From: Ginglymostoma cirratum
Lineage: Eukaryota
Direction of reading: 5' to 3'
Length of the DNA stretch: 64,000 bases
Assembly: GCA_024137785.1 (NCBI GenBank)
Contig: JAHRHZ010000002.1
Span: forward strand, 4,741,258-4,805,257
The number at the start of each line of letters is the position of its first letter. Position 1 is the first letter of the stretch. Positions 18,599 to 59,207 of the stretch are shown here, piece by piece. Both the position numbers and the translations under genes were made by a program. The notes under the pieces are model-generated. The model searched no databases. It was given only the letters and a program-made list of their open reading frames with translations, and was not told the origin of the DNA.

Positions 18599-18699
18599 TT
18601 AGAGCTCGGGCTCAGATATGCTCATCAGCTTCAGTTCCACATTATTCTCCATGACTTCCTGCTGAAGGACAGTGGGCCTGGTCTCCAGAATGGGATGAG
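18599..18699 (-). CDS. MHC class I-like gene A, terminal cytoplasmic exon (to TAA; frame stays open to TGA at 18368-18370)
   Basis: The acceptor ttttcattaatttcag| is conserved in both paralogs. The phase-1 frame gives (A)HPILETRPTVLQQEVMENNVELKLMSISEPEL*; the other two frames close earlier. Splicing to the TM exon is inferred. Confidence 0.7.
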
Positions 18700-18864
18700 C
18701 TGAAATTAATGAAAATATTAAACATATCAATTGAATTATAATTGAGAAAAGTATAATTGTGGCCATCAACTGGTCAGTAACAGTAATATGGAACTATAAC
18801 TTTTTAATGTCCTTTTCCAGGATTTATGTAGAACAGCTGCTGTGGATTTCCTTTTTAATATGTC

Positions 18865-19670
18865 CACTGATTTTCGTCATTTGTAGAAATGATTTGGATG
18901 TGAGTATAGGAGGTATGGTTAGTAAGTTTGCAGATAACACTAAAATTAAGTGGTTTAGTTGACGGTGAAGGTTATGTCAGAGTACAATGGGACCTTGATC
19001 GGATGGGACAAGGGGCCGAGGAGTAGCAGATGGAGTTTAATTTAGATAAATGTGGTGAGGCAAACCAGAGTAAGACTTGTACAGTAAATGGTAGGGCTGT
19101 GGGGAATGTTGCAGCACAAAAAGACCCTGGGAGGGCAGGTGCATACTTCCTTGAAATGATGTAGCTAAACTTGACAGGGTGCAGAAAAGATTTCTTAGGA
19201 TGTTGCCAGGATTGGAGGATTTGATCTATCGGGAGAGGCTGAGGCTTTTTTCCCTCGAGCGTTGGAGGCTGAAGGGTGACCTTACAGAGGTTTATAAAAT
19301 CATGAAGGGGAATCGATAGGGTGAATAGCCAAGGTCTTTTTCCTAGGCTGGAGGAGTCCAAAACTAGACGGCATAGATTTAAGGTGAGAGGGGAAGGATT
19401 TAAATAGGACCTAAGGGGCAATGATCTCATGCAGAGGCTGGTGCGTGTATGGAATGAGCTGCCAAAGGAAGTGGTGGAGGCTGGTACAATATAATTACAA
19501 TAATTACAATATTTAAAAGGCATCTGGATAGGTATATGAAAAGGAAGGGTTTAGAGGGATATGGGCCAAATACTGGCAAATGGGACTGGATCAGATTGGG
19601 ATGTTTGGTTGGTGCAGACATGTTGGACCGAAGGGTCTGATTCCACGCTGCATGACTCTATGATTCTATT
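18865..19670 (+). mobile_element. CR1 LINE 3' fragment
   Basis: NDLDV...SKFADNTKI followed by the CR1 C-terminal and 3' UTR pattern. Confidence 0.85.
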
Positions 19671-20029
19671 GACGAGGACGTGGAGCTTTGATTACAGACC
19701 ATTCTGCACTACATGTTACCCCTGAGACAGGGGAGTTGGGTCAGACAGAAAGTGGATAAAACAAAATAAAGCAGCAAGACAGGGAGACTCAGTCTGTGTG
19801 TTGAGTATGTCGAAAGAAAAGTCAAAAGTGAAGTCACAGTGAAGCAAGATTGTTTGGTGATGATTTTGCTCATTTGTTTGTCAAATTTGTGTCATTCATT
19901 AGTAAGCATAACGTTTCATTAGTATCGGCAGCATTCACTTGCGGTAATAAAGCTCACAGGGAGTAGTAGACTTTATTAATTTCAAATGAATGAAAAAAAA
20001 TAAATTAATTAACACACAAGAAAGACAGC

Positions 20030-20540
20030 AGTTCAGTTTTGGTCACTTTGATATAGGAAAGATGTTATTAAACTGGAAAGAGCGCAGAAGAAATTTACAA
20101 GGACATTGCCAGGACTAAAGGGACTGAGTTATAGGGAGAGGTTGGACAAGCTAGGACCTTTTTTCTTTAGAGTGTAGGACACTGAGGGGGGAATCTTATA
20201 GAAGTGTATAAGATCATGAGAGGTACTGATAGTGTTGAATGTACTCAGTCTTCTTCCCAGGGATGAGGAATCGAGGACTAGAGGGCATCAGTTTGAGGTA
20301 AGAATACATGGGAACTTGAGGGACAATCTTTTTTACACAGAAGGTGGTACACATATGGAATGAGATGCCAATGGAAGTGGTTGAGACGGGTATATTAACA
20401 ACATTTAAAAGGAATTTGGACGAATACATGGATAGGAAAGGTTTAGAAGGATATGGCTCAAGTGCAGGGAAATGGGGTTTGCGTGGACGGACATTTTTGG
20501 TTCGCATGGACCAGTTTGGGCTGTAGGACCCTATGACTCT
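20030..20540 (+). mobile_element. CR1 LINE 3' fragment
   Basis: Same C-terminal and 3' UTR pattern. Confidence 0.8.
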
Positions 20541-22505
20541 GTGGCAGGCAATGTGACTGCAGAATTGCTCCTGGCAGTGTGATCCAGCACAACATGTCTC
20601 AGTAAGTGTCTGTGCCATGAACAGCTTCAGCTCAGAATCAGTGAGCTGGAGACTGAGCTGCTAACTCAGCGACACAACAGGGAGGGAGATGGACACTTCA
20701 TTCCAGGATGCAGTCACAGCCTTTTGGATAGGTTCTTCAATTTTGTCAGTGGTCGGGGCTAGGAGTACGTGACTGCGAGTGAGATGGGTAGAGGACCCTG
20801 AAGAGGAGCCTCAGCCTTCGTAACTGTCCAACAGGATCAGCGTTTTTACAAACTGTATGGATGGAAGCATGGGTTAGAGGGTCGATAAGCAAACTGACTA
20901 GGATGCCACTGAGGTGTGGAGAGTTAATGGGAATACAGTTGTGGTAGGGAACAGTATTTTCAGTGAGATAGACACAGTTTTCTGCAGTGAAAGTGAGAGT
21001 CCAGAGCATTATATTGCCTGCAGATACCTAGTGTCCGGAACAACAGCATAGGGTTGAAGAGGAACGTGGAGTGGGAGGGGAATGATCACAGTCATGCTCC
21101 ACATTGGCACCAACAGCACAGACAGGAGAGAGCTGTTTTTGAGGGACAATGAGCATTTTGTGGGAGCTGCATATTTGGTGCACCCTCACCTGAACTGCTG
21201 GGTCCATGTTCTGGTGAGTGCTATAAGCGAGAGACCCTGCTGTTTAGTTTAAGGCTAAGGGAGAAAGTTTAGAAAGATGTGAAAAATTAAGGCTGTGTTT
21301 GCTGACACTGTACATCTGTATTAATTCGGAAACACGCTTACACACAATTCCAGACCTGTTATATCATCATGTCAAGATTACATGTGATGTCATACACAAA
21401 GCCTGCAATGAGCATGTGCAGAGAAGAAGTTCGTGCGACTTTGAAACAGGGATCAGCAAGGAGGGAGGACACAGGACCAGGATGTGGTGGAAGTGAGGAC
21501 GTGATGGAGGTGAACGAGGACATGATGGGGAGTGGGAGGGAAATGAGGACATGAGGTGCTGGTTAATGAGCTAGTGGTGGTGTGGTTTGCAAGGAAGTCT
21601 TGGGGGGCATTGGGGAAGAGGAAGGAGTGAGTAAGCAGGTTGCAGGAAGCCTCCAGCCCTCCTCCTCCTATTTCTCCTCCTTCTATCCCTCCATTCATCT
21701 TTCCTTTACCTCACTCCTTCCTCCTCTCCCCATTTCCTGAGCATTGCGCTGCCTTCTGTCCCCCTCTACTGAGCATACCCCAAGCTTCCTTGTAATGTTA
21801 CCACCATCTCTCGGGTCCCGCTACCACTCCAACCAGGTCCTGTGACCACCCACCCCCACCCCCCCACTCCCCCATCTACCAGCTTCCTGGACCAATTCCT
21901 CCCTCAGGAAGGTCCCAGCACCACCCCTGTCTTGAAGCCTCTCCCCACTCCCCTCTCTTGGGTATTGGGCATTGTTTTCCCCCTCCATCCCCTAAAACTG
22001 TTTACATAGACACATGTGAATTAAAAGTAGCACCTAGCCTGCATGCATTGGTGTCAGCAAAAACAATCTTACATTAAATGGAGAATATAAAGCAGAGACC
22101 AAGACACCAATAATGGAAATTGTGATCAGGAAGGGTCAGAGTATACAAATTAGACGTCCACCAGCAGATGAAACTAGAAGTTACAAGAATATTAAAAAGA
22201 ACTAAAGGCTCCCTATCTGAATTCATGAAGTGTTTGTAACAGATTCAATGAATTGACAGCACAAATAGACACGATCTGACAGCTATTACAGAGACATGGT
22301 TGCAAGACGAAGAAGACCGGGACCTGTATATTCGAATGTGTAAAATGTACAATGGAGTGTCTAACATTAGAAGTGATTCTGCAATTGGACAGCATTTGTT
22401 AGATCAGAGATAATAGGAACTGCAGATGCTGGAGAATCGAGATAACAAGGTGTAGAGCTGGATGAACATAGCAGGCCAAGCAGCATCATAGGAGCAGGAA
22501 AGCTT

Positions 22506-22533
22506 GACGTTTCGGGCCGAGACCCTTCATCAG
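22506..22533 (-). ncRNA. Minimal hammerhead ribozyme motif in a solo pLTR (element ~22405-22555)
   Basis: Reverse complement is CTGATGA-agggtctcggccc-GAAAC-GTC. Confidence 0.7.
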
Positions 22534-23054
22534 AAATGGGGTTGGGGAAGAGGGTCCTATAATGCTGATTGTGCATGGAACTATGCTGACAACTAATTTA
22601 GGATTGTCAGTCAGACTTGCACACCTTCCTAGTTTGAAATTGAAATGAAGTCTGTCAGTTAACACTCAATCATCATTAATTGCTGCATTCTCCAAGCAAT
22701 GCCCCTACCAATCAGAGACACTTGCCAATGATCAGCACTGTTCTCTCATACACAATAAACATTTTCAGTAGTACTCAACTCTGTATTACCAAATGTCTAT
22801 TTGTATAGCTGAGGCAGTCACAATTGCAATGTCAACACAGCTCAACTTACATGTAAGTTAAGACAAAGTAAGCTTTCTATTGAAATTATTCAAAACATAA
22901 GGTTGTGCCAGGTTTCGTTTTCAAATGTATTGATAATGAGACAGAGTCCCATGACTGAATGGACATTTATGCAACATAAGATTGAACATTTGGTAATAGG
23001 CTTACCATTTCTCAAAGGGTAAGAAGATGGGAAGCGTTGAACTTCATCGGGACT

Positions 23055-23530
23055 TTAGAACATAGAACATAGAGCAATACAGCGCAGAACAGGCCCTTCG
23101 GCCCTTGATGTTGCGCCGACCTGTGAACTAATCTAAGCCCATCCCCCTACACTATCCCATCATCATCCATATGCTTATCCAAGGACTGTTTAAATGCCCC
23201 TAATGTGGCTGAGTTAACTACATTGGCAGGCAGGGCATTCCACGCCCTTACCACTCTCTGAGTAAAGAACCTGCCTCTGACATCTGTCTTAAATCTATCA
23301 CCCCTCAATTTGCAGCTATGCCCCCTCGTACTAGCCGACGTCATCATCCTGGGAAAAAGACTCTCACTGTCCACCCTATCTAATCCTCTGATCATTTTGT
23401 AGGTCTCTATTCAATCCCCTCTTAGCCTTCTTCTCTCCAATGAGAACAGACCCAAGTCCCTCAGTCTTTCCTCATAAGACCTTCGCTCCAGACCAGGCAA
23501 CATCCTGGTAAATCTCCTCTGCACCTTTTC
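23055..23530 (-). mobile_element. Young CR1 LINE 3' fragment with (tagaaca)n tail
   Basis: [39 protein letters not shown] / IRGLDRVDSESLFP...TRGH. Confidence 0.9.
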
Positions 23531-23827
23531 CTTGTTGTCCTTTTTCATGACTAACTGAAAGTTGACATAGCAAGTAATTAAAGCAAATGACACATTGTTC
23601 TTCAGTATAAGAGGATTTCAGTATAGGAGTAAAGATGCTTGACTACAATTCTATTGAGCCTTGGTGAGATGTCACTGGATTATCGTGTGCATTTTAGTTC
23701 TCTGTCCCAATGGAAAAATATACTTGTTGTAGATGGAAATCCAACAAAACTTTGCCAGATTAATACCTGAAATGGAATGATTGCTCCAGGGAGTAAAGTT
23801 AAGGAGACTGGGCCTTCATTCTCTTGA

Positions 23828-23995
23828 TAAAAACCGAAAGAACTGCGGATGCTGTAAATCAGGAACAGAAACAAAGTTGCTGGAAAAACGAGCAGGTTCT
23901 GGGGAAGGATCACCAGACCCAAAACGTTAACTCTGATATTTTCTTCACAGATGCTGCTAGACCTGCTGAGCTTTTCCAGCAACTTTGTTTTTGTT
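23828..23995. mobile_element. Miniature inverted pLTR element of a second Penelope subfamily
   Basis: Minus arm 23828-23897 and plus arm 23898-23995. Diverged 15-bp TSD at 23813-23827 and 23996-24010; empty site in the paralog near 47630-47645. The same subfamily occurs at 1-400 and 40480-40710. Confidence 0.7.
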
Positions 23996-26900
23996 CCTTT
24001 ATCCTCTTCAGTTTGGAAGAATCTGAGATGACCTCATTCAAACATAACACATTCTTCCAGGGCTCAACAGGTGGTAAATGGAGGGTAGCTGGGAGTTAGA
24101 AATTAAGACTGTGGGACTCGGTCTCAGAATAAGGGGCAACTCATCGAAGGCTGAGATGGGAAGGAATTATTTCACTCAGAGCCTGGTGATTCACTGCAAT
24201 TCACTATCCAAGAAGCTTGGGGAAAGCTCAGTTGTTGAGTATCTTAAGACTGAGATCAATAATTTTTGGCATATTAAAGAACACCAAGGGATATGGGGAC
24301 AGTGTAGGAAAATGGCACGGATAACGGCCAATGAATGATGGAGTGAGCCTGAAGGGCTGCCTCCCCTCATATTGTGTCTATTTTTCATGTTCTTAATCAT
24401 TGTACAGACTCAGTCTCTAGATGACCAATGCTCACCTTCCTTAATTTTTTCCTTTTTAAATATTTGTAAATGTCCTTACTATTTCTTTATTTCTAACTAG
24501 CATACTCTATTTTCCGTCCTCATTAAGATGTTAATTATTCTTTGCAGTACTTTGAAATCTATCCAATCTTCTGACTCACATTTCTGAATCTGGGCACATT
24601 TTGTTTCAATTTTAGACTATACTTAACTTCCTTCTGTTGGCTACAATGGCAGATTCCTCCTTTAGAATCTTACCTTCAGTGAGGAAAATATCGTAGTATT
24701 CTGAAATATCTCCATAAATGGTTGACACTGCATCTTCATTGACCTATCCCTAAACCTAATTTCTCTGTCTTCATGCCCCCAGTTCTATCCTTATTTAAGT
24801 TTAAAACACTACTCTTAGATCCACACTTCTCCTCAAATTGAATGGGATATATGATTATATTAGGACAACTGCTCCCTCAAAGCAACTCTATTCTGTGATT
24901 ATTAATTAATCCTGTCTCATTGCACATTAGCAGATTTAACCAAACTGCTCCCTGGTATTCTTTGTGACACACACCTCCATGAGACTGTCCCAAAAAACGT
25001 TTCATGAACTCCTCATTGATGCAATTTACCAATCTCAGTTACCTAACGTACTTATAGAACAAAACCATCTATGTTTACTGCTGTACCTTTCTCACAAGTC
25101 CAAAATATTTCTTCCTGTGTACCTCACCCTACAACTTGGTTGGTCTTGGGGAAAATCTAAACAAAACCTAGCTCTAAGCTGTCAATCATTCACTGCTAAA
25201 TTCTCCACTGCAGCATGTCCGTCAGAGTTTACTTGTCAACCAATGAGCACTCTTCTCTCATAAATGTTGTTTTCCCTTTACGTTGATATTCAGATGAATT
25301 GGCCTGATGAGTGCAAATGAAAATCTTCTCAAAATGTGTCGTTTTCTTCAGCAGTACTGAAGTTCTGAACTGAGATCACAACAAAGACCACACATTGGGA
25401 TATCAAAAACATAGTTCAACTTACAGTTAAGTTATGAACAGGTAAGTTTTAAATGTTTTTCTCAGGCTGTATTAAACCCAATTGTGTGCCAGTTTTCATT
25501 TCCAAATGTATTGCTAATGTGAAGGTGAGACCCAGTCCCAAGGCTGATGGATCTTTATGGTAGATCAGATGCAAGAAACACACTGTATTTCTGATCTTCC
25601 ACCAGTGTGGATAACCTTACATTTCTCCACGTTGCCTTCCACATGTGAATGTTTTTGTCTACTTACTTAGCCTTTGCAAATCACCTTGAAGCATCTTGCT
25701 CCCTTCTTATTGCGCTGTTTGCAAAGTTGGAAATATTAAATTTAATCTCACATCCTAATAGTAATATATATAGATTGTGCATAGCTAGGTCCCCAGCACA
25801 GATGCCTGCAGTCTCCCACTAATCACAGCCTACTAACCTGAATATGACCCTATTTACCCCTATTATTATGTATTTTCCGTCTGTAAACCAGTTCTCAACC
25901 CTTTCCAACATATTCCCCCAAATTCCATTAATAAAGCCAAATACTGAAAAGGTGGATGAATTGAGCAGATACTTTGTTTCTGTCTTTACTGTAGGGGATA
26001 AACAAAATCACCAAAATAATTGTGATTCAGGAGGTGAAAGGAGGAACTTAAAACAACGATGCTGAGCAAGCTATCAGAACAGACACCGACAAGCTCCCAG
26101 GTCACACAGTCAGAGATGCACAGCACAGAAACAGACCTTTCCGTCCAACTTGCCCATGCCAACCAGATATCCTAAATTAATCTGTCTCATTTGCTAGCAT
26201 TGGCCCATATCCCTGTAAACCCTTCCTATTCATATACCCATCAGATGCCTTTTAAATGTTGTAACTGTACCAGCCTCCATGACTTCCTCTGCTAGATCAT
26301 TCCATACATGCACCACCCTCTGCTTGAAAAAGTTGCCCCTTAGGTCCCTTTTAAATTTTTCTCTTCTCACCTTAAACCCATGCCCTCTAGTTTTGAAGTC
26401 CCCTAACCTCCTCATCCTAGGCTCTTAAAAGAAGTCATGTGAGATAAAATTGCATTAGTTTTAATTTCCCAAATTTCCTGAATTCTGTAAAGGTCTCATC
26501 AGATTAGAAGATAGTCCATATGACTCCTCCCTTCAAGAAGTGAGGGAGACAGAAGGAAGGAAACTACAGATCAGTAAGCCTAAGTCTGGCACAGGGAAAG
26601 TGCATTTTGAAAATCTCAGTGCAACCAGGCTGAGTAAATGTGCTTTTGTGAAAAGACAATCATGTTTGACTAGTATATTTCTTTGAATTCTTTAAGTGAC
26701 AAGCAACTGGTTGAAGGGAAAGTTGTGGATGTTGTGTCCTCAGGTTCCCAGAAGGCATTTCACAAGACACCACATCACAGGTTACTATGCTCATGGTGTA
26801 GATGGTAACATGTTGGTTAGCATAGACAGAGGATTGACTACCTAAGAGGAAAATTAGATAATGCAAAAATATGTCATTTTCAGATTAGCAATAGGTAACA

Positions 26901-28729
26901 AACTCAGTGCCACAGTGATTAGTGCTGGGGCCTCAATTATTTACAATATATATCAATGATTTTGTTTAAGGAACTAAATATACAGTTCCTAAATTTACCC
27001 ATAATTCAAAGAAAGGCAGAAAAATTAGTAGTAAACAGACGGATACAAATAGTAATGGGCAAACAAATGACAGCTGGTTTATAATATGGGAAAATATGAC
27101 TTGTCCACTTTGTTAGGAAAAATAGGAAACAGCATTTTATTTAAACAGAGAGAGATGGTGGAACTCTGAAGTGCAGAGAGTTCTGTTACATGACTCACAG
27201 AAAGTTAGGGTTGGCAAGTGCAGCAAGTGATTAGGAAACCGAATTAAATGTTGCCGTTTATTCCAAGAATTGAAACATAAATGAATGTTGTGCTAGAGTC
27301 TGAAAGGCATTGGTTCTACAGCATCTGCAGTACCATGCACAGGTACGATGCCCTCACGTAAGAAAAGATGTAGATGTGTTCAAAGCAGATCCGAGAAAGG
27401 GTTGGACAGGTTGAGCCTGTATTCATTATAGTTTAAAAGAGGGAGAGATGTTCTTATTGGAACACACAAGGTCCTGAGGGGTTTGATAATGTGGACACTG
27501 AAAGAATGTTTCCTCTTGCGGGAGAGACTAGAATCATTGGACACGGTTTAAAAATGAGGGATCTTCCATTTCAATGGACTGAATTTTTTTCTCTTAGAGG
27601 GTTGTGAGTCTTTAGAACTCTCTTCCCCAGAAAGCAATGAATGCAGGGTCACTGAAAACGTTTAAGGTTGAGTTGATCTATTTTTGACCAACAAGGGAGT
27701 CAAAAGGTTATTGGGGGTAGGATTGGAATTAAGGACACAGTCAGATTATCCCTGTGGGCACAGTGACCCACCCCTGTTCCTGAGTCTTTTGTTTATAAAA
27801 TGCAGGTAAGAATAATGCGCTATTCAGATTTACTAAAGGCCTTCAATAATTTATCACATGGAAGTCTCATGACTAAGGCCAGTGCACATGAAGTGAAAGG
27901 ACAAGTAGCAGAGTTATTGCATACGGTTCTGGCTGCCGACTAGCAAAAGGATGCGGACGCTTTGGAGAGGGTACATAAATGGTTTACCGGCACGTTGCCT
28001 GGTTTCGACAGTTTGAATTGTGGTGAGGTATTGGACAAACTTGGTTTGTTTTCACTTGAACGGAGACTGAGGCGGTGGGGGGTGGTGACTTGATAAATGT
28101 TTATTAAATTATGACAGGCATGGATAGAATGAATACTCAGAGTCTTTTTCCCACTGTAGAAATGTCAAATACTAGGGAACATAAGTTTAAAGTAAAATGG
28201 GGAAAGTTTTTTAGGAGATGTGAGAGGCAAGGATTATTTTTAAACAGAAGCTGGTAAATATCTGGAATGCGCTGCCAGAGGCAGTGGTAGAAGCAGGTAC
28301 AATAGCAATTAAAAGGCATCTTGACAGATATATGAATAGGTAAAGAATAGAGGTGTGCAGATCACACAAAGGTAAAAGGCTTTTAATTGAGACGTGTCAG
28401 CGCAGGCTTTGTGGGCCAAGGCTCTAGAAGGTAAAGAAACCAGAACTGCACACAATACTCCAGGACTGAGGCTCTCCAAATGCAGTAAAACTTCTTTACT
28501 CCTATGGTCAAATCCTCTTGCAATAAAGGCCAACATACCATTCACCTTTGGTTAGATCACACATTCTACATCGTCATATTAAACATGGTCAATTCACACA
28601 CTATCCCCTCACTTCTACATTGCCCTCTCTCTCACTCTCCCTTCTGATTTTCCTGTACTCCCAGCACTGGAGATACCCTCACACTCACTGTTTCCCCATG
28701 TTCTACATTCCCCTCTGTCTGATTCTTAC

Positions 28730-28837
28730 CTCTCCATGGCCTTTTCCAGATGATTATTCCAAACGTAACAGCCAGTCCAGTGAGTAATCCAATTATTACT
28801 GAAAACTGGAACCACGTTCTGTTTTTTTCTGGGATTT
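28730..28837 (-). CDS. MHC class I-like gene A, exon 5 (connecting peptide and transmembrane)
   Basis: Not in the ORF track. 108-nt phase-1/phase-1 exon (tttcag| ... |gtaaga) encoding (E)IPEKNRTWFQFSVIIGLLTGLAVTFGIIIWKRPWR, a hydrophobic helix with a basic stop-transfer segment. A paralogous exon lies at 54124-54243. Confidence 0.88.
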
Positions 28838-29980
28838 CTGAAACACATTTGAGTAATATCAGTATTATTTATGTTCCTATATCCATACCCAGTGCACTGG
28901 GGACAATTTTAACTGATCCCACCCATTGGGAATTGATGGGATTAGTTTAAACACTGGTTTGACCCTCGCCAGATTTCACTCTCAGTGAAGTCACTGACGA
29001 TCCCATTGATGGGGTGTAAACACTGCACTGTCCCAATCCCAGGGGTTACTTTCCTAAACAGTTCAGTTCCCATTCTCCCCGATGTGTCTGTGTTCAATCT
29101 CCAGGGTTACTTTGGACAGCCCAGAAGGCAGCATCACTGATAAGTTTTTACATCAAACTTGAAAGGGATGATGAATAAACTGAGCACAGGAAACTGGGCC
29201 GAGCTGAAAATGAGGAAAACAGCAGAGGGACTGAGCAAAACTTCAAAAGAAGCACTTGGTCCAATCCAACCCCAGGACTTAGTCCCAATCTACTGCAGTG
29301 AACCTACCATGGTCAAGACATGAAATAAGTGAGAGAATCCACCTCAAAGGAAAGGCTTCCACAAATGTCCAGAGACTGAGGGACAGAGACTGAGACAAGG
29401 ATCAGCTGATCAAACAGAGTGTGGATGGATTTGTGTAATTGAAAACTCAAGCATTAAGCTGACAGTGAAATTTCCCTGGAATTGGGTATCTGCAGAAAGA
29501 ATGGTCTCAGGAAATGCAATTAAACTTTTTCTGTTTGTGTTAACATCTTTTCCAGTCTTCAACAAGCAGTGTTGTTGCACCTCCTTTTCGGTAATAAACC
29601 TGTGCTCTGTGTTTGAAGACTATCTGCAGGCTCTTGTGTATATTCAGAAATTTCAGTGTCTATCCAGCACCATAAGTAACAAAAATGTTAAGCAAATGAT
29701 CCATCAAGCCAGACATTTTAAATAGCCTTAGGCTGGGACAAGGAGGTTTTTTTGGTCTCTCAAGGAATCAGGGCATCTGGGAAGCAGAGAGGCAAGAAGA
29801 ATTGATGACGATGGCAGCAATATTCATGAGTATGCTCAGTCGTATACTTTAAATTTTTAAGGTGTTAAATTGAATTGTGGTGAAAATCATCCATAACCTC
29901 ATTGAATGGTGGAACAGAGTCAAAAGGCAAGCACAGGCACAAGCGTGCATGCACATGCACACATTGTATAAGTTCCTTAC

Positions 29981-30259
29981 CCAACTGACAGAACTTGGCT
30001 TCTGACAGGCTGCTGTGTTCAATTTGACAGGAATATTGATCCTCATCCCCAGCACTGATTTCAATCTCTTTCTGGATCTGATGGGTCCCATCATGGTTCG
30101 GTCGAATCCCCGAGGATTGTGTCTCAGACACGACCTCTCCATTCCTTAGCCAGCTCACCTCGATGTCTACAGGATAAAATCCAGTGACCAGGCAGGAGAG
30201 AGTGAGCGGCTTGTCTTGACGATTGGGTTCAATTCTGGAGATGAACACTTCAGGCTGAA
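29981..30259 (-). CDS. MHC class I-like gene A, exon 4 (alpha3 C1-set Ig domain)
   Basis: 279-nt exon with cacag| acceptor and |gtaagg donor. LSCLVTGFYPVDIEVSW...RPNHDGTHQ...YSCQIEHSSL is a canonical class I alpha3. It is separated from alpha2 by a 117-nt intron. Confidence 0.96.
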
Positions 30260-30376
30260 CTGTGATGGGAAAGGGTGAAAACACAAACAATAGACAGACA
30301 TTGAATGGAATAGGAGAACGGTTTCATAGATCAGTGACGTTAGATCAGAACATGGGGCCAAAACTAAAACTCATAC

Positions 30377-30652
30377 CTCTCCTTCCGAAATACTGTCTTC
30401 CAAAGTGTAAGCGTGATTTTAAACGCTCAACAAGTTCCTCTTCCAAGTGCCATTTCCAGTGCTTGTTCCATTCGTTATCAGAATCCCATTCCTCCTTGAT
30501 CTTCACTGCAAAGTGATTAGATGCGACCCATCTCATTCTGTCTGATTCTAAACTAATAAAGTCCTTTCCATCAAATCCAACATTCATCGATCTCTTAATG
30601 GAGCCATCAGCAGTGATCTCAACAGTCCTTATGAATTGCAAAATATGCACTC
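30377..30652 (-). CDS. MHC class I-like gene A, exon 3 (alpha2 domain, no cysteines)
   Basis: 276-nt exon with ggcag| acceptor and |gtatga donor. GVHILQFIRTVEITADGSIKRSMNVGFDGKDFISL...W...KEEWD...HLEEELVERLKSRLHFG shows the HxLQ, FDGKDF and W147 motifs of class I alpha2. Confidence 0.93.
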
Positions 30653-31317
30653 CTGCCAAAGATTAAAAGAGAAACAAAAATTAATTGTTCATGTAAAAGT
30701 CCCTTTAATATATAATTGGAACTCTATGCAATAAGTTTTAAAATCAAAGATCCTCCTGTTGGCTGAGTGTTATCCTGATAGATTGTTCTGAGGATTCTGC
30801 TACAGTAACAAGATCTTTTAGTGGAATCAGTTTTACATGAATAGATCCATCGCCACGTGAACTGATAATAAGACATTTGTAACTCATTTGACTTTGAGCC
30901 TGCTCTGCTACTCATTGCTGACTTAATTGTGGCCTTAATTTCACCTTCTTTCTTTTGCCACGAGCAACCCATCACTCTTTTGTAGATCAAAAATCTGTCT
31001 AACTCAGCCCAGCCTACATTCAATCACCCAGTGCATTGGAGATGACAATCAATGTATCCACCATCTCTGTACCTGTTTATTTTAAGAATCTAAGGATGTA
31101 ACCTTTGGGCTTATTAGTTTATCTCTTTTTTTCCTGTGGTGACTATGATTAGTTTAAGTTCATTTTTGTCTCAGGATTTTTTATTTTTGAGATTTTGTGT
31201 CTTCTATTTCGAAGATTGCAACATTTGTTCAAAACCACTCCCATTTCTTTATTTCCCACTATCAATTCCCCAGTTTTATCTTCTACATTTTTTCTGACTC
31301 TCTTCATACAGAATCCT

Positions 31318-31700
31318 GAGGAAGACCTGGGTATTGCACATTCACATGCCAGTGCATTAAGTGCTGTGCTCTTTGATGATGGGCAGCATATGGATGAGTA
31401 ATGGAAAGGGACCAAGAATAGATCCATGGCAAACACCAGAGGTAACACTGAGGGAACAGGAAGAAAAGCCATAAATGCTGATTACTTTGGATAGATAGGA
31501 AAGGACCCAGATAAGTTATTTTCCAACCAGCTGGATGGCATAGAAGCTTGAGGGGAATGCTACGGCCAATCACTTCTCATCACCACTTAAAATCCTTCAA
31601 GCTAGCACTTAGACCTTTCAAGTGGTTTGGTAATCCCACAGCTTTCCAGATTTTCACTAAACGAGTGGCCTTGCACAGATGCAGACAAGACTGGATATTT
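31318..31700 (-). mobile_element. L2-type LINE RT fragment in intron 2 of gene A
   Basis: SGVCHGSILGPFPLLIHMLP resembles the L2 motif GVPQGSILGPLLFLIYMLP. Confidence 0.6.
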
Positions 31701-33106
31701 TAAAATCTACCTTTAATAACCACCTTCTGGCCCGTGGACTTGCCCTCTTTCCCTAGTTAAAAAAAAATGCTTTTGTAGTTGAGTCAGCAATAGCCCATTC
31801 TTTCCCTGGCACTTAGTCTGTCTACTGACAGCTCCATCTTGAACAGAATTTTAAGGCAAGTTGTGGGTAACTTTATCCACACCTTACAGAAAAGTAATCA
31901 GGAAATAGCTGATGGAGGAATGAGAAAGATTTGCTCAAGGGAATGACCACTCCAGAAAGCAGGAAAGCTGGGAAATTTGTAACAGTCAGTTTATGTATTA
32001 ATATGTGTGGACATTTAGAAGAATACATTATTAAACTTTTGTAATAATAGCTCACAAGAAAGACAAGTGGGATCTTTCATTTAGGTACAGTTACAACATT
32101 TAAGAAACATTTGGATAGGTACATGAATAGGAAAAGTTCAGAAAGCTATGGGCCAAGCACAGGCAAATGGGACTAAGGTTTGGGGAACCTGGTCAGCACG
32201 GTTGAAGCATCTGTTTCCATGCTGTATGACTCTAGGCTGCAGACACGTTAAGAAAAGGTGAAGAGGGAAAATTTTTTTTACGTGGTCAGGGAAGTCAAGG
32301 GATAAGAACTGTTCTGGGGTGAAAACTTGATTGGTGGGATGTAAATATGAAGTTCCAGTAAAATGTTATCGGCAGATGATCACATATTTAAAGCCTCTTC
32401 TTTTACAGGAAAATTATGCTAATGGTAGATTTGAAGGAGAGAGGGACAGAAGCTGAGGACTGAGAAATGACAACGATGACAACCAAGACAAAGACAACGA
32501 GATGGTCAACAACTGCACTGCACCAGCAAAATCTTGTTCTGATGAAAGGTCACTGAAGAAAAAGGTGAATTTTTTTTCTTTCCATGGCTGTTGCCTGACC
32601 TGCTGAACATTTCCCATGGTTTCTGATCTTATAGTAGTAGAAACTTTTATAGACACACAGTCAGAAAATATGCCTGAAATAGCCAAGAATTTAACCAACA
32701 GCCTGAAATGAGAAACCATTAAGTTGCACAAAGTAGTAAAATAAACACATTACTCACACCAGGAGCTGCAAGAGGAGTCAATTGCCAGGATAAATCCACA
32801 TGAGGAGGAGGTTTGACAACTAGCACAGGACCTTGATTGAAATATTTGAATCATTGTTTTACATATTTCTGACTGCAGCTTCACTGCTGTGCAGAAGCCA
32901 ATTCCATGAGATAGCATGCATCCAGCGAAAATTTTCCTGCCTATTGTATGACCAGGTACCCATTCCACAGCTGCCTAATACAGTTGTGGTCGGAGTGACC
33001 CAAACAGTGTGTGTCTCAGTCTCACATATTGCAGTCTAACTGTGGCTGTATTCTGACCTGCTTTAAACAGGGCAGTTTGTGACAGAATCTGTGTCAGTGA
33101 TCTTAC

Positions 33107-33367
33107 CAGATGTTTGGTTTGTACTTTTCATTACCGTCCTCAGATTCTCCCTTGCCATGGCAGAATGTTTGTTCCCTTGCTTTGTGAGCATTTTCCAGTA
33201 ATTAGCATCATACGAGTCTGTCATCCACTGCTGTAAGGAGACTGTCTGACAGCTGTCACTGTCGTAATAGGTCACAGGAACTCCATTAATCATTGCTACA
33301 CCGAAATACTCAGGTAGGTCAGTTGTGCCAGAGACAGCTATAAAAGCCGCAGTAAAGATTTTGTTCT
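33107..33367 (-). CDS. MHC class I-like gene A, exon 2 (alpha1 domain)
   Basis: 261-nt exon with ctacag| acceptor and |gtaaga donor. Translation (E)NKIFTAAFIAVSGTTDLPEYFGVAMINGVPVTYYDSDS...QQWM...ANYW...LRTVMKSTNQTSG has the class I alpha1 pattern (PEY, YDS, WM, YW, N86-x-T glycan site). Confidence 0.92.
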
Positions 33368-33644
33368 CTGTAGATTTAAACAAAAGTGAAAGGGTCAGGT
33401 TTGTATACTTGATCAAGCCGAGCCTATACCCAAAAACCCCGTATCAGTGACAGGAGTCACTAAAACAGTCAAATCCACTGTCTCAATAAGCAACTCAACC
33501 AGTAATGCAGTCAATTGGATTTTCTAATAATAACACTCAGATTGCCACTCCACTCTTTTTAACATAAAGAAAGAACTCCATATTTCTGGCAGGAGGTTCT
33601 GATTCGGCTCCTTCCGAAATGTGGAGCCGTACTTGCATCATGAC

Positions 33645-33972
33645 AAGTCAGTATGGTGGCTTCAGTGGATACCTCACAGCACTAGGAAGCTGGGTTTGAT
33701 CCCACGCTTGGGTGACTGTCTAGTGGAGTTTGTACATTCTCTCCACATCTGTGCAGGTTTCCACTGGGTGCTCTGGTGTCCTCCCACAGTCCAAAGATGT
33801 GCAGGCGAGGTGGATTGGCCATGCTAAATTGCCCGTAGTGTCCAGGGATGTGCAGGTCAGGTAGGTTAGCCATAGGATATGCAGGGTTAGGGTCTGGGTG
33901 GGATTCTCTTCAGAGCGTCAGTGTGGATGTGATAGGCTGAATGGCCTGCTTCCATACTTTAGGGATTCTATA
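33645..33972 (+). mobile_element. HE1-like SINE
   Basis: Diverged copy of 44888-45200 with the same core. Confidence 0.8.
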
Positions 33973-35239
33973 ACATTCAAAAAAAAAGTCCTTGGTAGTG
34001 CAGAACAGTCTTCATATAGTAGAAGCAGCCAAGGAGGCATCAATGCAAATGGAACATTGAATTCTACTTTTATCTGGAGACAGCCAGGAAAATCATGGAG
34101 AGGGAAAAAATGGTTAGCAATCCACTATCCCTGTTCCAATCAGAAACTGAGAATAAACTACTGTTTATATTCTGGAAAAAAAGTACACTCGATTATCAGG
34201 GCTCCATTTTACTGCGAACATGAAAGTTGATCATTTCTTGAATTCAAATTGCAGAACCAGAGGTTCAATGATTGGCTCGTCTTGGAAAAAGATCAACTAA
34301 ACTAAGCAATGACAGTCTGAATCGTTACTGTCACCAGTAACCGGGACATTGAAAATCACACAGGGTAATGCTTTAGGAACCAAGGACAGCATTTAATTAT
34401 TGTAATTATTAGTGTGATGGCACCCCTACCCCTTCACTGTCAGCCAATCACATGGTGGGAAATGGGGAAGATGGGCATGTCACAAGAGATTGAGAATGGA
34501 GGCAATCTTTCTCTCTTGCCTTTTGGAGCCCATAGCAATTCTGTGCTGCAAATTACTAAACTATTAATCCAGAGACTTAGGTAATGTCCTGGGGCCCCAT
34601 GTATAAATCCTTTTATGGTACATGGTGGAATTTTAATTCAATACAATCTAAAATTTAAAAAGTCTGATGATGACCATGAAACCATTACTCATGGTCAGAA
34701 AAACGCATCTGGTTCACTAATTTCCTTTAGGGAAGGAAACTACCATCCTTACCTGGGCTGGCCTATATGTGACTCCAGACCCACAGCAATATGGCTGACA
34801 AGTAAAAGCCCTCTGAGCAATTAGGGGTGGGCAATAAATGCTAGCCTATCCAGCAATGCTCACATCCCATGAATGAATACTTTTTTTGAAAGTAAAGTCT
34901 CATTTGTGTTTTTTCCTGCCAGGTATACACAAGAGAAGGGGTTATAAAACCAACTGCAATGTGTGTGTATGTGGTAGTCTGCTCTTTAATGAAACTGGGC
35001 AACAGTGTACTGGGGAGGCAATAGCCGAAGAAAACTACTTGGCTATATGGCTACAACTATAACTACCATGGTGACAAGAATACTTACAGGTTACTCATTA
35101 AACTCCTTTCGATACACAAAACTCATATGTCACTAGTTAAAAATTCAAAAACCCAAAATATAAAAAAATTGTACATTTCTATACAATAATCACCAGTTCA
35201 CATCACACCCACAAAGTCAAAGATATTCAAAGACATTTT

Positions 35240-35333
35240 TTCTGATGAAGGGTTTAGGCCCAAAACGTCAAGTTTTCCTGCTCCTATGATGCTGCTTGAC
35301 CGGCTGTGTTCATCCAGCCCCATGCTTGTTATC
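35240..35333 (+). mobile_element. Solo Penelope pLTR (core with GAAA changed to AAAA)
   Basis: ctgatgaagggtttaggcccaaaacgtc...cttgttatc. Confidence 0.78.
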
Positions 35334-36047
35334 AAAGATATTCCTGTTGATCTACACATTGAAAATGTTTTCAACTTATTCTAGAATATCAATGATGAAC
35401 TGGTAAACTTTGGCCAGAGCCAGAATGCAAAGTAGCAATTGGCAAATGCCAAAAAGGGACCAACTACATGTTGCAAAAGGTCATTATTTGGGAATGACCT
35501 GACAATATGTGGATAGTCATTCATTTTGGCCACACAGGGACTAGCTTTGTGTATCATGACAAATCCAAAAGCATTACGCTATGATATCATGTGCATGCTA
35601 CCTCAGGCACACATGGGGTTCAAAAGTGTCCCTGCCTCTGAACCAACAGACCTGGGTTCAATCCCATCTGCTCCAGAGATGTGTCATAACATTTTTGAAC
35701 AGGTTGATTAAAGAATATCAAATACATAATTTCCTCTAATTTTCTTAACCACCTGCAAGGACCTCCAAGGCCCATGCATGTTAGTGATTTCTGGAACCAG
35801 AGATCAATGCCACGATTAGTGTGCCAACACTGACCTTGGAACATCAGTGCCTCTGTGTGTGTCGCACAGTTATGCAGCTTACTGATTGAATGCCCAAGAA
35901 CTGCTGCACTGCCCAGCAATGCAATCAGGGAAGTCAGTGCATCTTGAATATATACAAGGTACACCAAAAAGACCTCATTAGCAGAAGGAGCCTCTAAATC
36001 TACACAATGATCCATCCCATCCTCAGACAATAGTAGAGGACCTATTA

Positions 36048-45555: not shown

Positions 45556-45662
45556 TTATGTTTTGAGCTCGGGCTCAGATATGCCCATCAGCTTCAGTTT
45601 CGCATTATTGTCCGCGACTTCCTGCTGATGGAGCGTGAGCCTGGTGTCCAGAAAGGGTTTAG
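45556..45662 (-). CDS. MHC class I-like gene B, terminal cytoplasmic exon (to TAA; frame stays open to TGA at 45346-45348)
   Basis: Same acceptor as gene A. Translation (A)KPFLDTRLTLHQQEVADNNAKLKLMGISEPELKT* is homologous to 18599-18699. Confidence 0.7.
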
Positions 45663-45759
45663 CTGAAATTAATGAAAATATTAAACCAATCAATTGCATC
45701 ATAATTGAAGGAAGTATAATTGTGGCCATTAACAGTAAATATGGAATTGTAACATTTTA

Positions 45760-54123: not shown

Positions 54124-54243
54124 CTCTCCATGGCTGAATCCAGAAGAGTATTCCAATTATCCCGACAATAACAGCCAGTGGACTGATCATTGATGCAATT
54201 ATGGTTCCAAGATGAAGGTATCCCACACTATCTTCTGGAATTT
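54124..54243 (-). CDS. MHC class I-like gene B, transmembrane exon
   Basis: 120-nt phase-1/phase-1 exon (tttcag| ... |gtaaga) encoding (E)IPEDSVGYLHLGTIIASMISPLAVIVGIIGILFWIQPWR. The flanking intron is homologous to that of the gene A TM exon. Confidence 0.87.
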
Positions 54244-54559: not shown

Positions 54560-54920
54560 TCACTCCATTGCTGCTCCGAGAGAATGCTGCACCACTGAAG
54601 GTTGGTGGAACGATGCTGCGGTACAGCTACATGGTGAGAAGGACACTACTCATGGAGCTGTGTACTGTTAGAAGGACAGTATTGGGAGAAGGCCAGGCAG
54701 CAATGAACTGTTCAAAGAACAATCTTGACGGAGTGCCGCGCCGTCAGTGAGGGTCAGCGCTGAGGGAGTGCCGCGCNNNNNNNNNNCCGCGCCGTCAGTG
54801 AGGGTCAGCGCTGAGGGAGTGCCGCGCCGTCAGAGGGTCAGTACTGAGTAAATGCTACAGTATTGGAGGGTTAGTATGGGGGAATGCTGCAATGTTTGAC
54901 GGGCAGTACTAAAGTAGTTA
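54560..54920 (+). repeat. 32-35 bp minisatellite, collapsed at a 10-N gap (54777-54786)
   Basis: Unit ggagtgccgcgccgtcagtgagggtcagcgctgag is near-perfect around the gap and degenerate on both flanks. Confidence 0.8.
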
Positions 54921-57900: not shown

Positions 57901-58534
57901 GAGGTTGACGAGTAGGAGAACTGCACATAGACAATACACTTTCCCCGTGTTCCTCTTATGATATAAATGGGCTTGGTCTAGAAGTTTGCTGAGCCGTATT
58001 GATAAACCTCAGTATTTACTGCACTAACTAGATCCATCTTTTAGAACACAACTTTCTTGTTGGATTGTTTGGAAAATCCAAATTCTCAAGGATTTCATTT
58101 CTAGTTCAGCAATATGTCAAAGACTTAACCTCAGGCTCTCCCCAACCTCACGTTGCCTTATCAGGAAAAGTAGCAGAAGCAGGAGTAGCCATATTTGCCT
58201 ATTCTACCTTTCAATACGAACTTGGCTCATTTTGTGCCTTACTGCCACTTTCCTGCTCATTCGCCAGATCCCTTGGCTACCTGAGACACCAAACTCTGTC
58301 TATTTCAGACTAAAATATACTCAGCAGCAGAACATTCACAATCGTGTAGGGGACACAATTCATAATTCTTAAAGGGTGGCCATTTCTAAAGGGTAGTTCA
58401 TGGAGTAAAGAACTCTTCAGTGTTTGGGGATCGAAAATTGGGGCAGTATCTCATTCATCTTCCCTTCTCAGTCACGCATGTTCTCCCACACTCCTTCTCC
58501 CTTGCTGTGTCACACTTCCAGTTCAGTTCCTTAC

Positions 58535-58813
58535 CCCAATGGTAGAGCTTAGCCTCTGTCAGGCTGCTGTGTTCAACTTGACAGGAATATTGATCCCCAT
58601 CCCCAGCGGTGATTTCAACCTCTTTCTGGATCTGATGGGTCCCATCGTGGTTCGGTCGAATCCCCGAGGATTGTATATCAGACATGACCTCTTCATTCCT
58701 CAGCCAGGTCACCTCGATGTCTACAGGATAAAATCCAGTGACCAGGCAGGAGAGAGTGAGCGGCTTGTCCTGACGACTGGGCTCGCTTCTGGAGATGAAT
58801 ACTTCAGGCTGAA
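58535..58813 (-). CDS. MHC class I-like gene B, alpha3 exon
   Basis: 279-nt exon encoding LSCLVTGFYPVDIEVTW...RPNHDGTHQ...YSCQVEHSSLTEAKLYHW, 77/93 aa identical to gene A. GT-AG boundaries are at the same positions as in gene A. Confidence 0.96.
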
Positions 58814-58931
58814 CTGTGATGGGAAAAGGTGAAAATACAAACAATAGACAGACACTGAATGGAATGAGAGAGCGGTTTCATAGATCAGTGAGGTTAGATC
58901 TGAACATGGGGTCAAAAACTCAAATACACAC

Positions 58932-59207
58932 CTTTCCTTTTGAGATATTCCTTTCCAATGTTTAAACGTGATTTTAAGCGTTCAGCAAGCTCCACTTCCA
59001 TCAGCCATTTCCAAAACTTATTCCAGGATTCATCAGAATCCCATTTCTCTTTTGTTTTCACTGCATTGTGATGTGATGCGACCCATCTCATTCTGTCCGA
59101 CTCCAGACTAATGTAGTCCTTTCCGTCAAAGGCAACATTCATTCTTCTCTTAATGGAGCCATCTTCACACACCTCAACATTCCTTATCCATTGCAAAATA
59201 TGCTTTC
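58932..59207 (-). CDS. MHC class I-like gene B, alpha2 exon
   Basis: 276-nt exon with gacag| acceptor and |gtgtgt donor. GKHILQWIRNVEVCEDGSIKRRMNVAFDGKDYISL...VKTKEKWD...LMEVELAERLKSRL has 65/92 aa identical to gene A alpha2 by manual count. Confidence 0.92.

What the first reader, a model, noticed from the sequence alone, without database searches (positions are those of the whole stretch)
18599..59207. Tandem non-classical MHC class I genes that have both lost the alpha2 disulfide (C101-C164)
Seen: where class I proteins have LQxMYGC(101) and YLEGTC(164)VEW, gene A reads LQFIRTV and HLEEELVER, and gene B reads LQWIRNV and LMEVELAER. Both cysteines are replaced by V and L in both paralogs. 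Frames and splice sites are intact, as are the alpha3 disulfide, beta2m-contact motifs (Q96, D119-G120-x-D122, RPNxDGTxQ) and, in gene A, the N86 glycan site. Known: this disulfide is among the most conserved class I features. Inference: paired Cys-to-aliphatic replacement in two paralogs only ~71% identical in alpha2 suggests a selected, functional disulfide-less platform, not decay. It may belong to a named shark non-classical lineage (UBA/UCA/UDA/UEA/UFA; the multigene UEA is the first to test) or to an undescribed one. I cannot decide this without a search.
Basis: partly seen in the sequence, partly recalled or inferred. Interest (0 to 1): 0.8.

Follow-up and report, generated by a model that had tools for sequence, protein, structure and literature searches.

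The report
Shark class I genes lacking a disulfide
Two neighbouring shark MHC class I-like genes do lack the usual disulfide bond in their binding platform, but so does every member of a large shark-only gene family already annotated in 13 species (most likely the published UEA lineage), so this is an old family trait and not a new discovery in these two genes.

Summary
Two minus-strand class I genes sit in tandem, and in both the alpha2 cysteines C101 and C164 are replaced by Val and Leu. Exons, phase-1 splice sites and the alpha3 disulfide are intact.

Gene A (CDS 39779..18599, six exons, 365 aa) is transcribed. Contigs from four studies carry three of its predicted junctions.

Gene B is only partly in the window. 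Its alpha1 and leader exons lie beyond 64000, and its expression was not tested. The N gap (54777-54786) lies inside a ~36-nt tandem repeat in a gene B intron and touches no exon.

The replacement did not happen separately in two paralogs.
- About 100 related proteins from 13 shark species (both superorders; no ray or chimaera) all lack Cys at 101: Val in 81 of 88 domains.
- Position 164 is among the most variable alpha2 columns.
- Outgroup shark class I clades keep both cysteines.

The family's features match the published UEA lineage: shark-only, multicopy, non-classical, and distinct from the outgroup clades I take for UAA/UBA and UDA. I could not confirm this directly, because no named UEA sequence and neither primary paper was available.

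Earlier notes from this scan saw the same trait 173 kb away and assigned a neighbouring cluster to UEA.

Verdict: a member of a known family; modest interest.

The parts
39707..39779 (-). Gene A leader exon (ATG at 39779-39777, signal peptide MEKWIPRMLLILFSISLCFSWVSA, phase-1 GT donor)
   Evidence: Read. Similar to the leaders of the whale shark and Hemiscyllium orthologues. RNA contigs that run past the alpha1 acceptor carry 2 mismatches, which fits the leader's end ATCTGCGG laid over the intron's ATCTACAG.
33107..33367 (-). Gene A alpha1 exon (261 nt, phase 1/1; NQT sequon at the N86 position; Y59 and W60 kept, position 84 is Ser)
   Evidence: MHC_I, E 5.4e-07. The junction to alpha2 is seen in contigs of 3 runs. 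It is 92% identical to whale shark P0167.
30377..30652 (-). Gene A alpha2 exon (276 nt, no cysteine)
   Evidence: Both junctions are seen in RNA contigs. It is 98% identical to whale shark P0161/P0167.
30621..30623 (-). Gene A codon GTT = Val at the C101 position
   Evidence: Alignments to chicken BF2 and duck class I.
30432..30434 (-). Gene A codon CTT = Leu at the C164 position
   Evidence: Alignments to chicken BF2 and duck class I.
29981..30259 (-). Gene A alpha3 exon (279 nt, C1-set Ig domain with both cysteines, RPNHDGTHQ)
   Evidence: C1-set, E 6.6e-18. The junctions 30259|30377 and 28837|29981 are seen in RNA contigs.
28730..28837 (-). Gene A connecting-peptide and transmembrane exon (108 nt)
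   Evidence: Contigs of three runs cover exactly 28730-28837 and are spliced to alpha3; one of them continues 146 nt beyond the stretch that was laid.
18599..18699 (-). Gene A cytoplasmic-tail exon up to the TAA stop (18601-18599). The stop falls where the whale shark orthologue reads Gln and continues for 55 more residues.
   Evidence: Splicing into this exon was not checked directly.
58932..59207 (-). Gene B alpha2 exon (276 nt; Val at 59176-59178 and Leu at 58987-58989 replace C101 and C164; one unpaired Cys in VEVCEDG)
   Evidence: MHC_I, E 1.8e-14. Nearest relative is Mustelus P0160 at 86%.
58535..58813 (-). Gene B alpha3 exon (279 nt)
   Evidence: C1-set, E 1.6e-19.
54124..54243 (-). Gene B connecting-peptide and transmembrane exon (120 nt, AG acceptor, GT donor, phase 1/1)
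   Evidence: Colinear with gene A's TM exon.
45556..45662 (-). Gene B cytoplasmic-tail exon up to the TAA stop (45558-45556). This is a premature stop two codons after gene A's, at a different Gln codon.
54777..54786 (.). Assembly gap (10 N) inside a GC-rich ~36-nt tandem repeat in gene B's alpha3-to-TM intron
   Evidence: It is 534 nt from the TM exon acceptor. It was not filled.

Best explanation
[quoted passage not shown] The family is most probably the published UEA lineage. Both genes belong to its conserved, low-copy sublineage.

The family's common ancestor lost the alpha2 disulfide before the two shark superorders split. Since then position 101 has been held as a small aliphatic residue, nearly always Val. 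Position 164, freed from its partner, became one of the variable sites on the alpha2 helix; it is Leu in the sublineage of genes A and B.

Inferred, not shown:
- The protein is a membrane-anchored heavy chain that pairs with beta2-microglobulin and has a normal class I fold.
- Val101 and Leu164 pack against each other under the alpha2 helix in place of the S-S bond.
- The end of the groove that normally holds the peptide N-terminus is rebuilt (Y159 to H, W167 to R, Y171 to R), and so are C-terminal anchors (R84 to S, T143 to I, K146 to E).
- It therefore does not hold peptides by their termini as classical class I does. It more likely shows another kind of ligand, or its own surface, to innate-like T or NK-type receptors.
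For: Shown:
- Exon structure, phases and splice sites were read from the sequence.
- Domain identity comes from Pfam.
- Cys to Val and Cys to Leu come from HMMER alignments to solved class I chains.
- Spliced contigs from runs of four studies carry junctions: 28837|29981 in all four runs, 30259|30377 in two, and 30651|33106 in three.
- The profile search gave only six cysteine-less relatives among the 150 best hits, all from sharks.
- The word search then gave about 100 clusters of one family in 13 shark species of both superorders, with a clear score drop to other class I lineages.
- No family member has Cys at 101, while 16 of 16 outgroup domains have both cysteines.
- Entropy is 0.52 bits at position 101 and 2.63 bits at position 164, rank 87 of 91.
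- Alpha2 tree: the family is monophyletic (SH-aLRT 93). A groups with whale shark (95) and then with Hemiscyllium and Chiloscyllium (99). B groups with Mustelus (98).
- Alpha1 tree: A sits in a 4-row clade (100) inside a 14-row sublineage with one or two genes per species (99).
- dN/dS for A versus B is 0.30-0.38 in alpha2.
- The AlphaFold2 model of whale shark orthologue P0167 has pLDDT about 95 over the ectodomain. Its best structural matches are chicken BF2 (target-normalised TM-score, TMt, 0.92-0.95; rmsd 1.6-2.2 A).

Literature: UEA is a multicopy shark MHC-Ib family that lies in the large Ib cluster with UDA and UFA (PMC10751288, PMC12562908). [quoted passage not shown]
Against: - No sequence carrying the name UEA was available, and the two primary papers (Almeida et al. 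2020, 2021, J Immunol) are not held. The name therefore rests on matching the described properties and on excluding the outgroup clades, which I take for UAA/UBA and UDA but which carry only automatic names.
- MHC linkage was not tested in this window. It rests only on unchecked notes of this scan about CD1-like class I genes about 0.9-1.15 Mb away.
- Gene B is incomplete in the window and its transcription was not tested.
- Beta2m pairing, Val-Leu packing and the ligand are all inferences. AlphaFold2 does not sense the loss of a disulfide.
- Both tails carry premature stops relative to orthologues, so some decay of the cytoplasmic part cannot be excluded.
Confidence: 0.8

Rival explanations
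1. The two genes belong to a shark class I lineage that has not been described. It would be distinct from UEA and from the other named lineages (UAA, UBA, UCA, UDA, UFA, UGA).
For: None of the roughly 120 listed database relatives carries a lineage name; all have automatic RefSeq names. I could not compare with any named UEA sequence or read the primary papers.
Against: The family is by far the largest non-classical class I family recovered from sharks here: about 100 clusters in 13 species of both superorders, with no ray or chimaera. That is how the reviews describe UEA (PMC12562908, PMC10751288). A second, unnamed expansion of this size is unlikely to have been missed by authors who surveyed these same genomes. 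An independent follow-up in this scan reached the same assignment for a neighbouring cluster (unchecked).
Confidence: 0.1
2. The cysteines were lost independently in genes A and B under selection for a platform without the disulfide.
For: Both paralogs show the same Val and Leu pair although they are only 71% identical in alpha2.
Against: All 88 near-complete alpha2 domains of the family lack Cys101. The Val/Leu pair is shared by the whole sublineage across shark orders, including Heptranchias and Heterodontus. One ancestral loss explains everything.
Confidence: 0.02
3. One or both genes are decaying pseudogenes, and the missing disulfide is part of that decay.
For: Both cytoplasmic tails stop early relative to the whale shark, Hemiscyllium and Chiloscyllium orthologues. 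The tail exon gives dN/dS of about 4 over 32 codons, which is compatible with neutrality. Gene B lacks alpha1 and leader exons in the window and carries a Penelope-like insertion and an assembly gap in its introns.
Against: All ectodomain exons are open with canonical splice sites. Gene A is correctly spliced in RNA-derived contigs of four studies. Alpha2 dN/dS is 0.30-0.38. Gene A's alpha2 is 98% identical to the whale shark orthologue and 77% to that of Heptranchias. The disulfide is missing in the entire conserved family, so its absence is no sign of decay.
Confidence: 0.08

Closest known systems
Shark non-classical class I lineage UEA (Almeida et al., J Immunol 2021; summarised in PMC10751288 and PMC12562908)
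   Same: Multicopy family found in sharks only. Present in both shark superorders, which fits the title's '350 million-year-old'. Non-classical: most peptide-terminus anchors are replaced. Genes lie in tandem clusters. Expression was detected in what is probably the nurse shark.
   Different: Nothing was found that conflicts. The identity could not be verified against named sequences. I could not establish whether the published description mentions the missing alpha2 disulfide.
Classical shark and bird class I (nurse shark UAA, PDB 6LUP; chicken BF2, for example 4G43 and 6LHF)
   Same: Same exon plan and same predicted fold (TMt 0.89-0.95). Shares the alpha3 disulfide, Q96, D119-G120-x-D122, Y59, W60, W147 and the N86 sequon.
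   Different: Only 32-34% identical. C101 and C164 are replaced by Val and Leu. R84, T143, K146, Y159, W167 and Y171 are replaced by S, I, E, H, R and R.
Other shark class Ib clades recovered as outgroups. One is probably UDA (it includes Callorhinchus and a nurse shark 'nonclassical MHC class I antigen'). The other is UAA/UBA-like.
   Same: Shark class I heavy chains, about 30-39% identical to the family.
   Different: They form separate clades and all 16 keep both alpha2 cysteines. One of the two clades extends beyond sharks: it includes Callorhinchus.
PDB 9CH4 chain A ('Ig-like domain-containing protein', 268 aa)
   Same: Best solved-structure match to gene A's alpha1 (E 1.3e-08). It shares the DLP-Y...QQWM...NYW pattern, with about 49% identity over 49 residues to family members.
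   Different: It is not among the 60 best matches for alpha2, so it is not a family member. Its organism and lineage could not be established here. It may be one of the shark CD1-like molecules mentioned in PMC12562908, but that is a guess.
Teleost non-classical lineages S and P (Grimholt et al. 2015, PMC4364491)
   Same: Expanded non-classical class I lineages of fish that lack typical peptide anchors.
   Different: That paper calls the alpha2 and alpha3 cysteines 'hallmarks of MHCI' and reports them conserved in the S and P lineages. The shark family here lacks the alpha2 pair throughout.

Membership tests
MHC class I heavy chain (Pfam MHC_I + C1-set) | Alpha1 and alpha2 domains match PF00129 and alpha3 matches PF07654 above the curated cut-offs | tested here: met
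   Gene A alpha1 29.8 bits (cut-off 28.3). Alpha2 47.7 and 54.2 bits. Alpha3 65.3 and 70.5 bits (cut-off 21).
MHC class I heavy chain (Pfam MHC_I + C1-set) | One domain per exon, phase-1 introns, followed by a TM exon and a cytoplasmic exon | tested here: met
   Read. Three gene A junctions are confirmed by RNA contigs.
MHC class I heavy chain (Pfam MHC_I + C1-set) | Alpha2 intradomain disulfide C101-C164 (called a hallmark in PMC4364491) | tested here: not met
   Val and Leu in both genes. This is a conserved feature and not a defining one. Fold and domain membership are unaffected.
Classical (peptide-presenting) class I | Invariant residues that hold the peptide termini: Y7, Y59, Y/R84, T143, K146, W147, Y159, Y171 | tested here: not met
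   orthologue P0167 against duck class I. Y59 and W147 are kept. R84 to S, T143 to I, K146 to E, Y159 to H, Y171 to R. Y7 lies outside the alignment; by eye it is Ala.
Shark UEA lineage | Expanded, multicopy family in sharks (PMC12562908, PMC10751288) | tested here: met
   About 100 clusters at 90% identity across 13 species, several to more than ten per species. There are two genes in this window, and earlier notes report more at +24, +173 and +289 kb.
Shark UEA lineage | Restricted to sharks; not found in rays or chimaeras (recalled from the paper's abstract, not verified here) | tested here: met
   Every hit with a bit score above 220 is from a shark, apart from one unnamed JGI fragment. 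The only chimaera protein (Callorhinchus, P0263) falls in an outgroup clade. The limit of this test is that only the best 120 hits were listed.
Shark UEA lineage | Distinct from UAA/UBA and from UDA | tested here: met
   In the alpha2 tree the family is a clade (SH-aLRT 93) separate from the clade with named Triakis UAA sequences, which I read as UAA/UBA, and from the clade with Callorhinchus, which I read as UDA. Identity to these is 30-39%.
Shark UEA lineage | Lies in the large MHC-Ib cluster with UDA and UFA, between brd2/b2m and hsd17b8/rxrb/col11a2 (PMC10751288) | tested here: inconclusive
   No marker gene lies in the window. Unchecked notes of this scan place CD1-like (UFA/UGA-type) class I genes 0.86-1.15 Mb away on the same piece.
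Shark UEA lineage | Clusters with the named reference UEA sequences | not testable with these tools
   No named UEA sequence was returned by any search. The primary papers are not held.

The most novel reading that the evidence does not exclude
The complete absence of the alpha2 disulfide may be an unreported, lineage-defining trait of this very old shark family of 100 or more genes. Val101 would be fixed as a hydrophobic stand-in. The freed position 164 would be recruited into the family's most variable patch on the alpha2 helix (columns 67-79), making it a specificity-determining residue. The family would then be a natural model of a class I platform that folds and is quality-controlled without the redox step that acts on the alpha2 disulfide in other vertebrates.
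Probability: 0.3. Interest if true: 0.5.

Novelty: new member of a known kind. Interest (0 to 1): 0.3.

Why it matters
The alpha2 disulfide is treated as a hallmark of class I molecules (PMC4364491). From general knowledge, it ties the alpha2 helix to the groove floor next to the pocket for the peptide N-terminus, and it is handled by ER oxidoreductases during peptide loading.

A whole family that has done without it for several hundred million years shows that the class I platform can be stable without it. It also shows that position 164 can then diversify.

For this scan the practical value is different. The trait is a quick diagnostic of this family: Val at 101 within the pattern 'Q-x-I-x-x-V-E'. 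Further sightings in this genome, such as the one 173 kb away, should be filed as the same known family and not as new findings.

Tried and rejected
- Reading the primary papers failed. Almeida et al. 2020 and 2021 were tried by PMC id, DOI and PubMed id and are not held. Eight text searches found no statement about cysteines in UEA. The supplements of PMC10751288 hold no UEA accession numbers.
Only A versus B could be computed.
- Looking for gene B's alpha1 in 59208-64000 found nothing.
- I asked whether the RNA contigs that differ from gene A at 30111, 30131 and 30154 come from gene B. They do not: B matches only two of the three letters and is 92% identical over that stretch. They come from another paralog or allele, so they say nothing about gene B's expression.
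- Identifying PDB 9CH4 failed: no paper was found, and its alpha2 does not rank among the hits.
- Tandem Repeats Finder did not report the repeat around the gap, because the N run splits it. The repeat is visible by eye.
- Rfam found nothing in the window at gathering thresholds.
Exons were searched one by one by reference, and whale shark orthologue P0167 stood in for the full-length protein.
- In one search I copied a 52-residue stretch of 9CH4, printed, into a local BLAST.
Full report
**What is there**

Both genes lie on the minus strand.

Gene A has six coding exons, read:

| Exon | Coordinates | Length |
|---|---|---|
| leader | 39779..39707 | 73 nt |
| alpha1 | 33367..33107 | 261 nt |
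| alpha2 | 30652..30377 | 276 nt |
| alpha3 | 30259..29981 | 279 nt |
| connecting peptide / TM | 28837..28730 | 108 nt |
| tail, with TAA at 18601-18599 | 18699..18599 | 101 nt |

- All introns are phase 1 with GT..AG.
- There are five junctions, not six.

Gene B shows four exons: alpha2 59207..58932, alpha3 58813..58535, TM 54243..54124 and tail 45662..45556.
- No alpha1 or leader exon is detectable in 59208-64000, so gene B runs out of the window.
- The two genes are one duplication unit. Colinear blocks join A 18008-30698 to B 44692-59251.

**The assembly gap**

The ten N at 54777-54786 lie in gene B's intron between alpha3 and the TM exon, 534 nt from the TM acceptor.
- The gap interrupts a GC-rich tandem repeat of about 36 nt. 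The same unit reads on both sides.
- The likeliest cause is an array of unknown length that the assembler could not size.
- No exon or frame depends on it.
- The exons on either side have the order, strand and phase of gene A.

**The observation**

Pfam assigns alpha1 and alpha2 to MHC_I and alpha3 to C1-set, all above the curated cut-offs.
- HMMER alignments to chicken BF2, and of the orthologue to duck class I, put Val on C101 and Leu on C164 in an ungapped stretch.
- Gene A's alpha2 has no cysteine. Gene B's has one, three residues after position 101, with no partner.
- The alpha3 cysteines, Q96, D119-G120-K-D122 and RPNHDGTHQ are present in both genes. Gene A also has the NQT sequon at position 86.

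**Expression**

Logan contigs of four runs from four studies were laid on 28001-34000.
- They show exactly the predicted joints: 28837|29981 in all four runs, 30259|30377 in two, and 30651|33106 in three. Each joint has CT..AC on the plus strand, that is GT..AG on the gene's strand.
- Contigs cover the TM exon from 28730 to 28837 and then continue into sequence outside the stretch.
- Contigs that pass the alpha1 acceptor run on to 33375 with two mismatches. That is what the leader's last bases (ATCTGCGG) give when laid over the intron's last bases (ATCTACAG).
- Spliced contigs can only come from RNA, so gene A is transcribed and correctly spliced.
- Gene B could not be tested.
- Contigs over the middle of alpha3 differ from gene A at three places. 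They are not gene B either. They come from another paralog or allele.

**Relatives**

A profile of the two alpha2 exons was searched against 1.84 billion representative proteins. It found 477 class I relatives.
- Among the best 150, only six lack the cysteines. All six are sharks: Heterodontus, Cetorhinus, Chiloscyllium and Scyliorhinus.

A search with one of them (P0002) gave about 100 clusters of one family.
- The 13 species are Heterodontus, Mustelus, Hemiscyllium, two Scyliorhinus, Carcharodon, two Chiloscyllium, Stegostoma, Rhincodon, Cetorhinus, Heptranchias and Pristiophorus.
- Both shark superorders are covered. No ray or chimaera appears.
- Scores drop sharply to the other class I lineages, which are 30-39% identical.
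- All names are automatic RefSeq names.

In this family no alpha2 domain has Cys at 101.
- Of 88 near-complete domains, 81 have Val, 3 Ala, 2 Ile and 2 Leu (entropy 0.52 bits).
- Position 164 is among the most variable columns (2.63 bits, rank 87 of 91): Leu 30, Phe 23, Cys 8, Tyr 8, also Ser, Gly, Asp and others.
- It sits in the family's most variable patch (columns 67-79), which corresponds to the C-terminal half of the alpha2 helix.
- All 16 outgroup domains keep both cysteines. These are named Triakis UAA sequences, a clade I take for UAA/UBA, a probable UDA clade that includes Callorhinchus, and a lungfish protein.
- So the disulfide was lost once, in the family's ancestor. Eight members that still have an unpaired Cys164 fit the reading that C101 went first.

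**Per-domain trees**

| Domain | Result |
|---|---|
| alpha2 (the two cysteine columns left out) | The family is a clade (SH-aLRT 93). Gene A joins whale shark P0161/P0167 (95), then Hemiscyllium and Chiloscyllium punctatum (99). Gene B joins Mustelus P0160 (98). |
| alpha1 | Gene A sits in the same four-member clade (100), inside a 14-member sublineage (99) with one or two genes per species, all Val or Ile at 101 and Leu at 164. |
| alpha3 | Barely resolved. A and B sit nearest to other orectolobiform sequences whatever their sublineage. |

- A and B are therefore old paralogs of a conserved, low-copy sublineage.
- Gene A is 92%, 98% and 93% identical to the whale shark orthologue in alpha1, alpha2 and alpha3.
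- The window therefore comes from a close relative of the whale shark.

**Selection**

- In alpha2, A versus B gives dN 0.20, dS 0.52-0.65 and dN/dS 0.30-0.38.
- In alpha3, dS is only 0.13-0.19, and the short intron between the two exons has a distance of 0.12.
- Alpha3 and that intron have therefore been homogenised between the copies, while alpha2 keeps its old divergence. This is common in class I families.
- The tail exon gives dN/dS of about 4 over 32 codons. That is too few sites to distinguish from neutrality.

**How it probably works**

The AlphaFold2 model of whale shark orthologue P0167 is very confident over the ectodomain (pLDDT about 95).
- It superposes on chicken BF2 with TMt 0.92-0.95 and rmsd 1.6-2.2 A. 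A normal class I fold is predicted.
- In the alignment, Y59 and W147 are kept. R84, T143, K146, Y159, W167 and Y171 become S, I, E, H, R and R.
- From general knowledge of class I structures, C164 lies on the alpha2 helix beside the pocket for the peptide N-terminus (T163, W167, Y159, Y171), and C101 lies on the strand beneath it.
- I infer that Val101 and Leu164 pack against each other where the S-S bond was.
- I also infer that this end of the groove has been rebuilt, and that the molecule does not clamp peptide termini.
- Beta2m pairing is inferred from the kept contact motifs.
- None of this was tested, and AlphaFold2 is blind to the loss of a disulfide.

**Which family**

- The reviews describe two expanded shark MHC-Ib families. 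UBA is derived from classical UAA. UEA is the more ancient one.
- They also describe single-copy UDA and the CD1-like UFA and UGA (PMC12562908).
- UEA is multicopy and lies with UDA and UFA in the large Ib cluster (PMC10751288).
- The family found here is multicopy, shark-only and old. It is separate from the clade I take for UAA/UBA and from the probable UDA clade, and it is not CD1-like.
- By its properties and by elimination it is UEA.
- I could not confirm this against a named sequence. I also could not find out whether the 2021 paper remarks on the missing cysteines.
- Earlier notes of this scan saw the same trait in another gene 173 kb away, and a follow-up assigned a cluster 289 kb away to UEA. 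These are leads, not support.

**Verdict**

The genes are real, and gene A is expressed.
- The feature is not special to these two genes. It is the ancestral state of a large, known, already annotated shark family.
- What may be new is modest: the trait is universal in the family, and position 164 has become one of its most variable sites.
- Interest 0.3.

Noticed in passing
window 18599-18601 and 45556-45558 (minus strand): Both tail exons end in TAA stops where the whale shark orthologue reads Gln (EPELQTQPLQ) and continues for another 53-55 residues. Gene A reads EPEL*, gene B reads EPELKT*. These are two different Gln codons, so the two truncations arose independently. The sequence after the stop is still recognisably homologous in both genes.
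   Followed up: partly
window 29981-30376 compared with 58535-58931: Alpha3 and the alpha2-alpha3 intron are much more alike between A and B (dS 0.13-0.19; intron distance 0.12) than alpha2 is (dS 0.52-0.65). This points to gene conversion that stops at the alpha2 exon.
   Followed up: partly
window about 49300-51560: An insertion in gene B's TM-to-tail intron carries long ORFs. One has a weak GIY-YIG nuclease match (E 3.4e-4), which suggests a Penelope-like retroelement. It is flanked by copies of a repeat of about 130-160 nt (49309-49469, 51322-51447).
   Followed up: partly
window 22399-22558, 35238-35340, 39208-39290, 39374-39513, 45756-45888, 60124-60223, 63124-63246: Dispersed copies, on both strands, of the same ~100-160-nt repeat that flanks the Penelope-like insertion. 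Rfam gave no match at gathering threshold.
   Followed up: no
protein P0161 compared with P0167 (whale shark orthologue of gene A): RefSeq isoform X2 skips the TM exon and joins alpha3 directly, in frame, to the tail exon. That would give a form with no membrane anchor. Whether the window's species makes this form was not tested.
   Followed up: no
window 30052-30177 (gene A alpha3): In all four runs the contigs over this stretch carry T, T and G at 30111, 30131 and 30154 instead of the window's C, C and C, at higher depth than the gene A-specific contigs. They belong to a more abundant paralog or allele that is not gene B.
   Followed up: partly
window 33227-33229 and about 29988-29990 (minus strand): Gene A has two extra unpaired cysteines. 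One is in alpha1 (DSDSCQTV) and is shared with whale shark. The other is at the membrane-proximal end of alpha3 (AKFCQL), where whale shark has Tyr.
   Followed up: no
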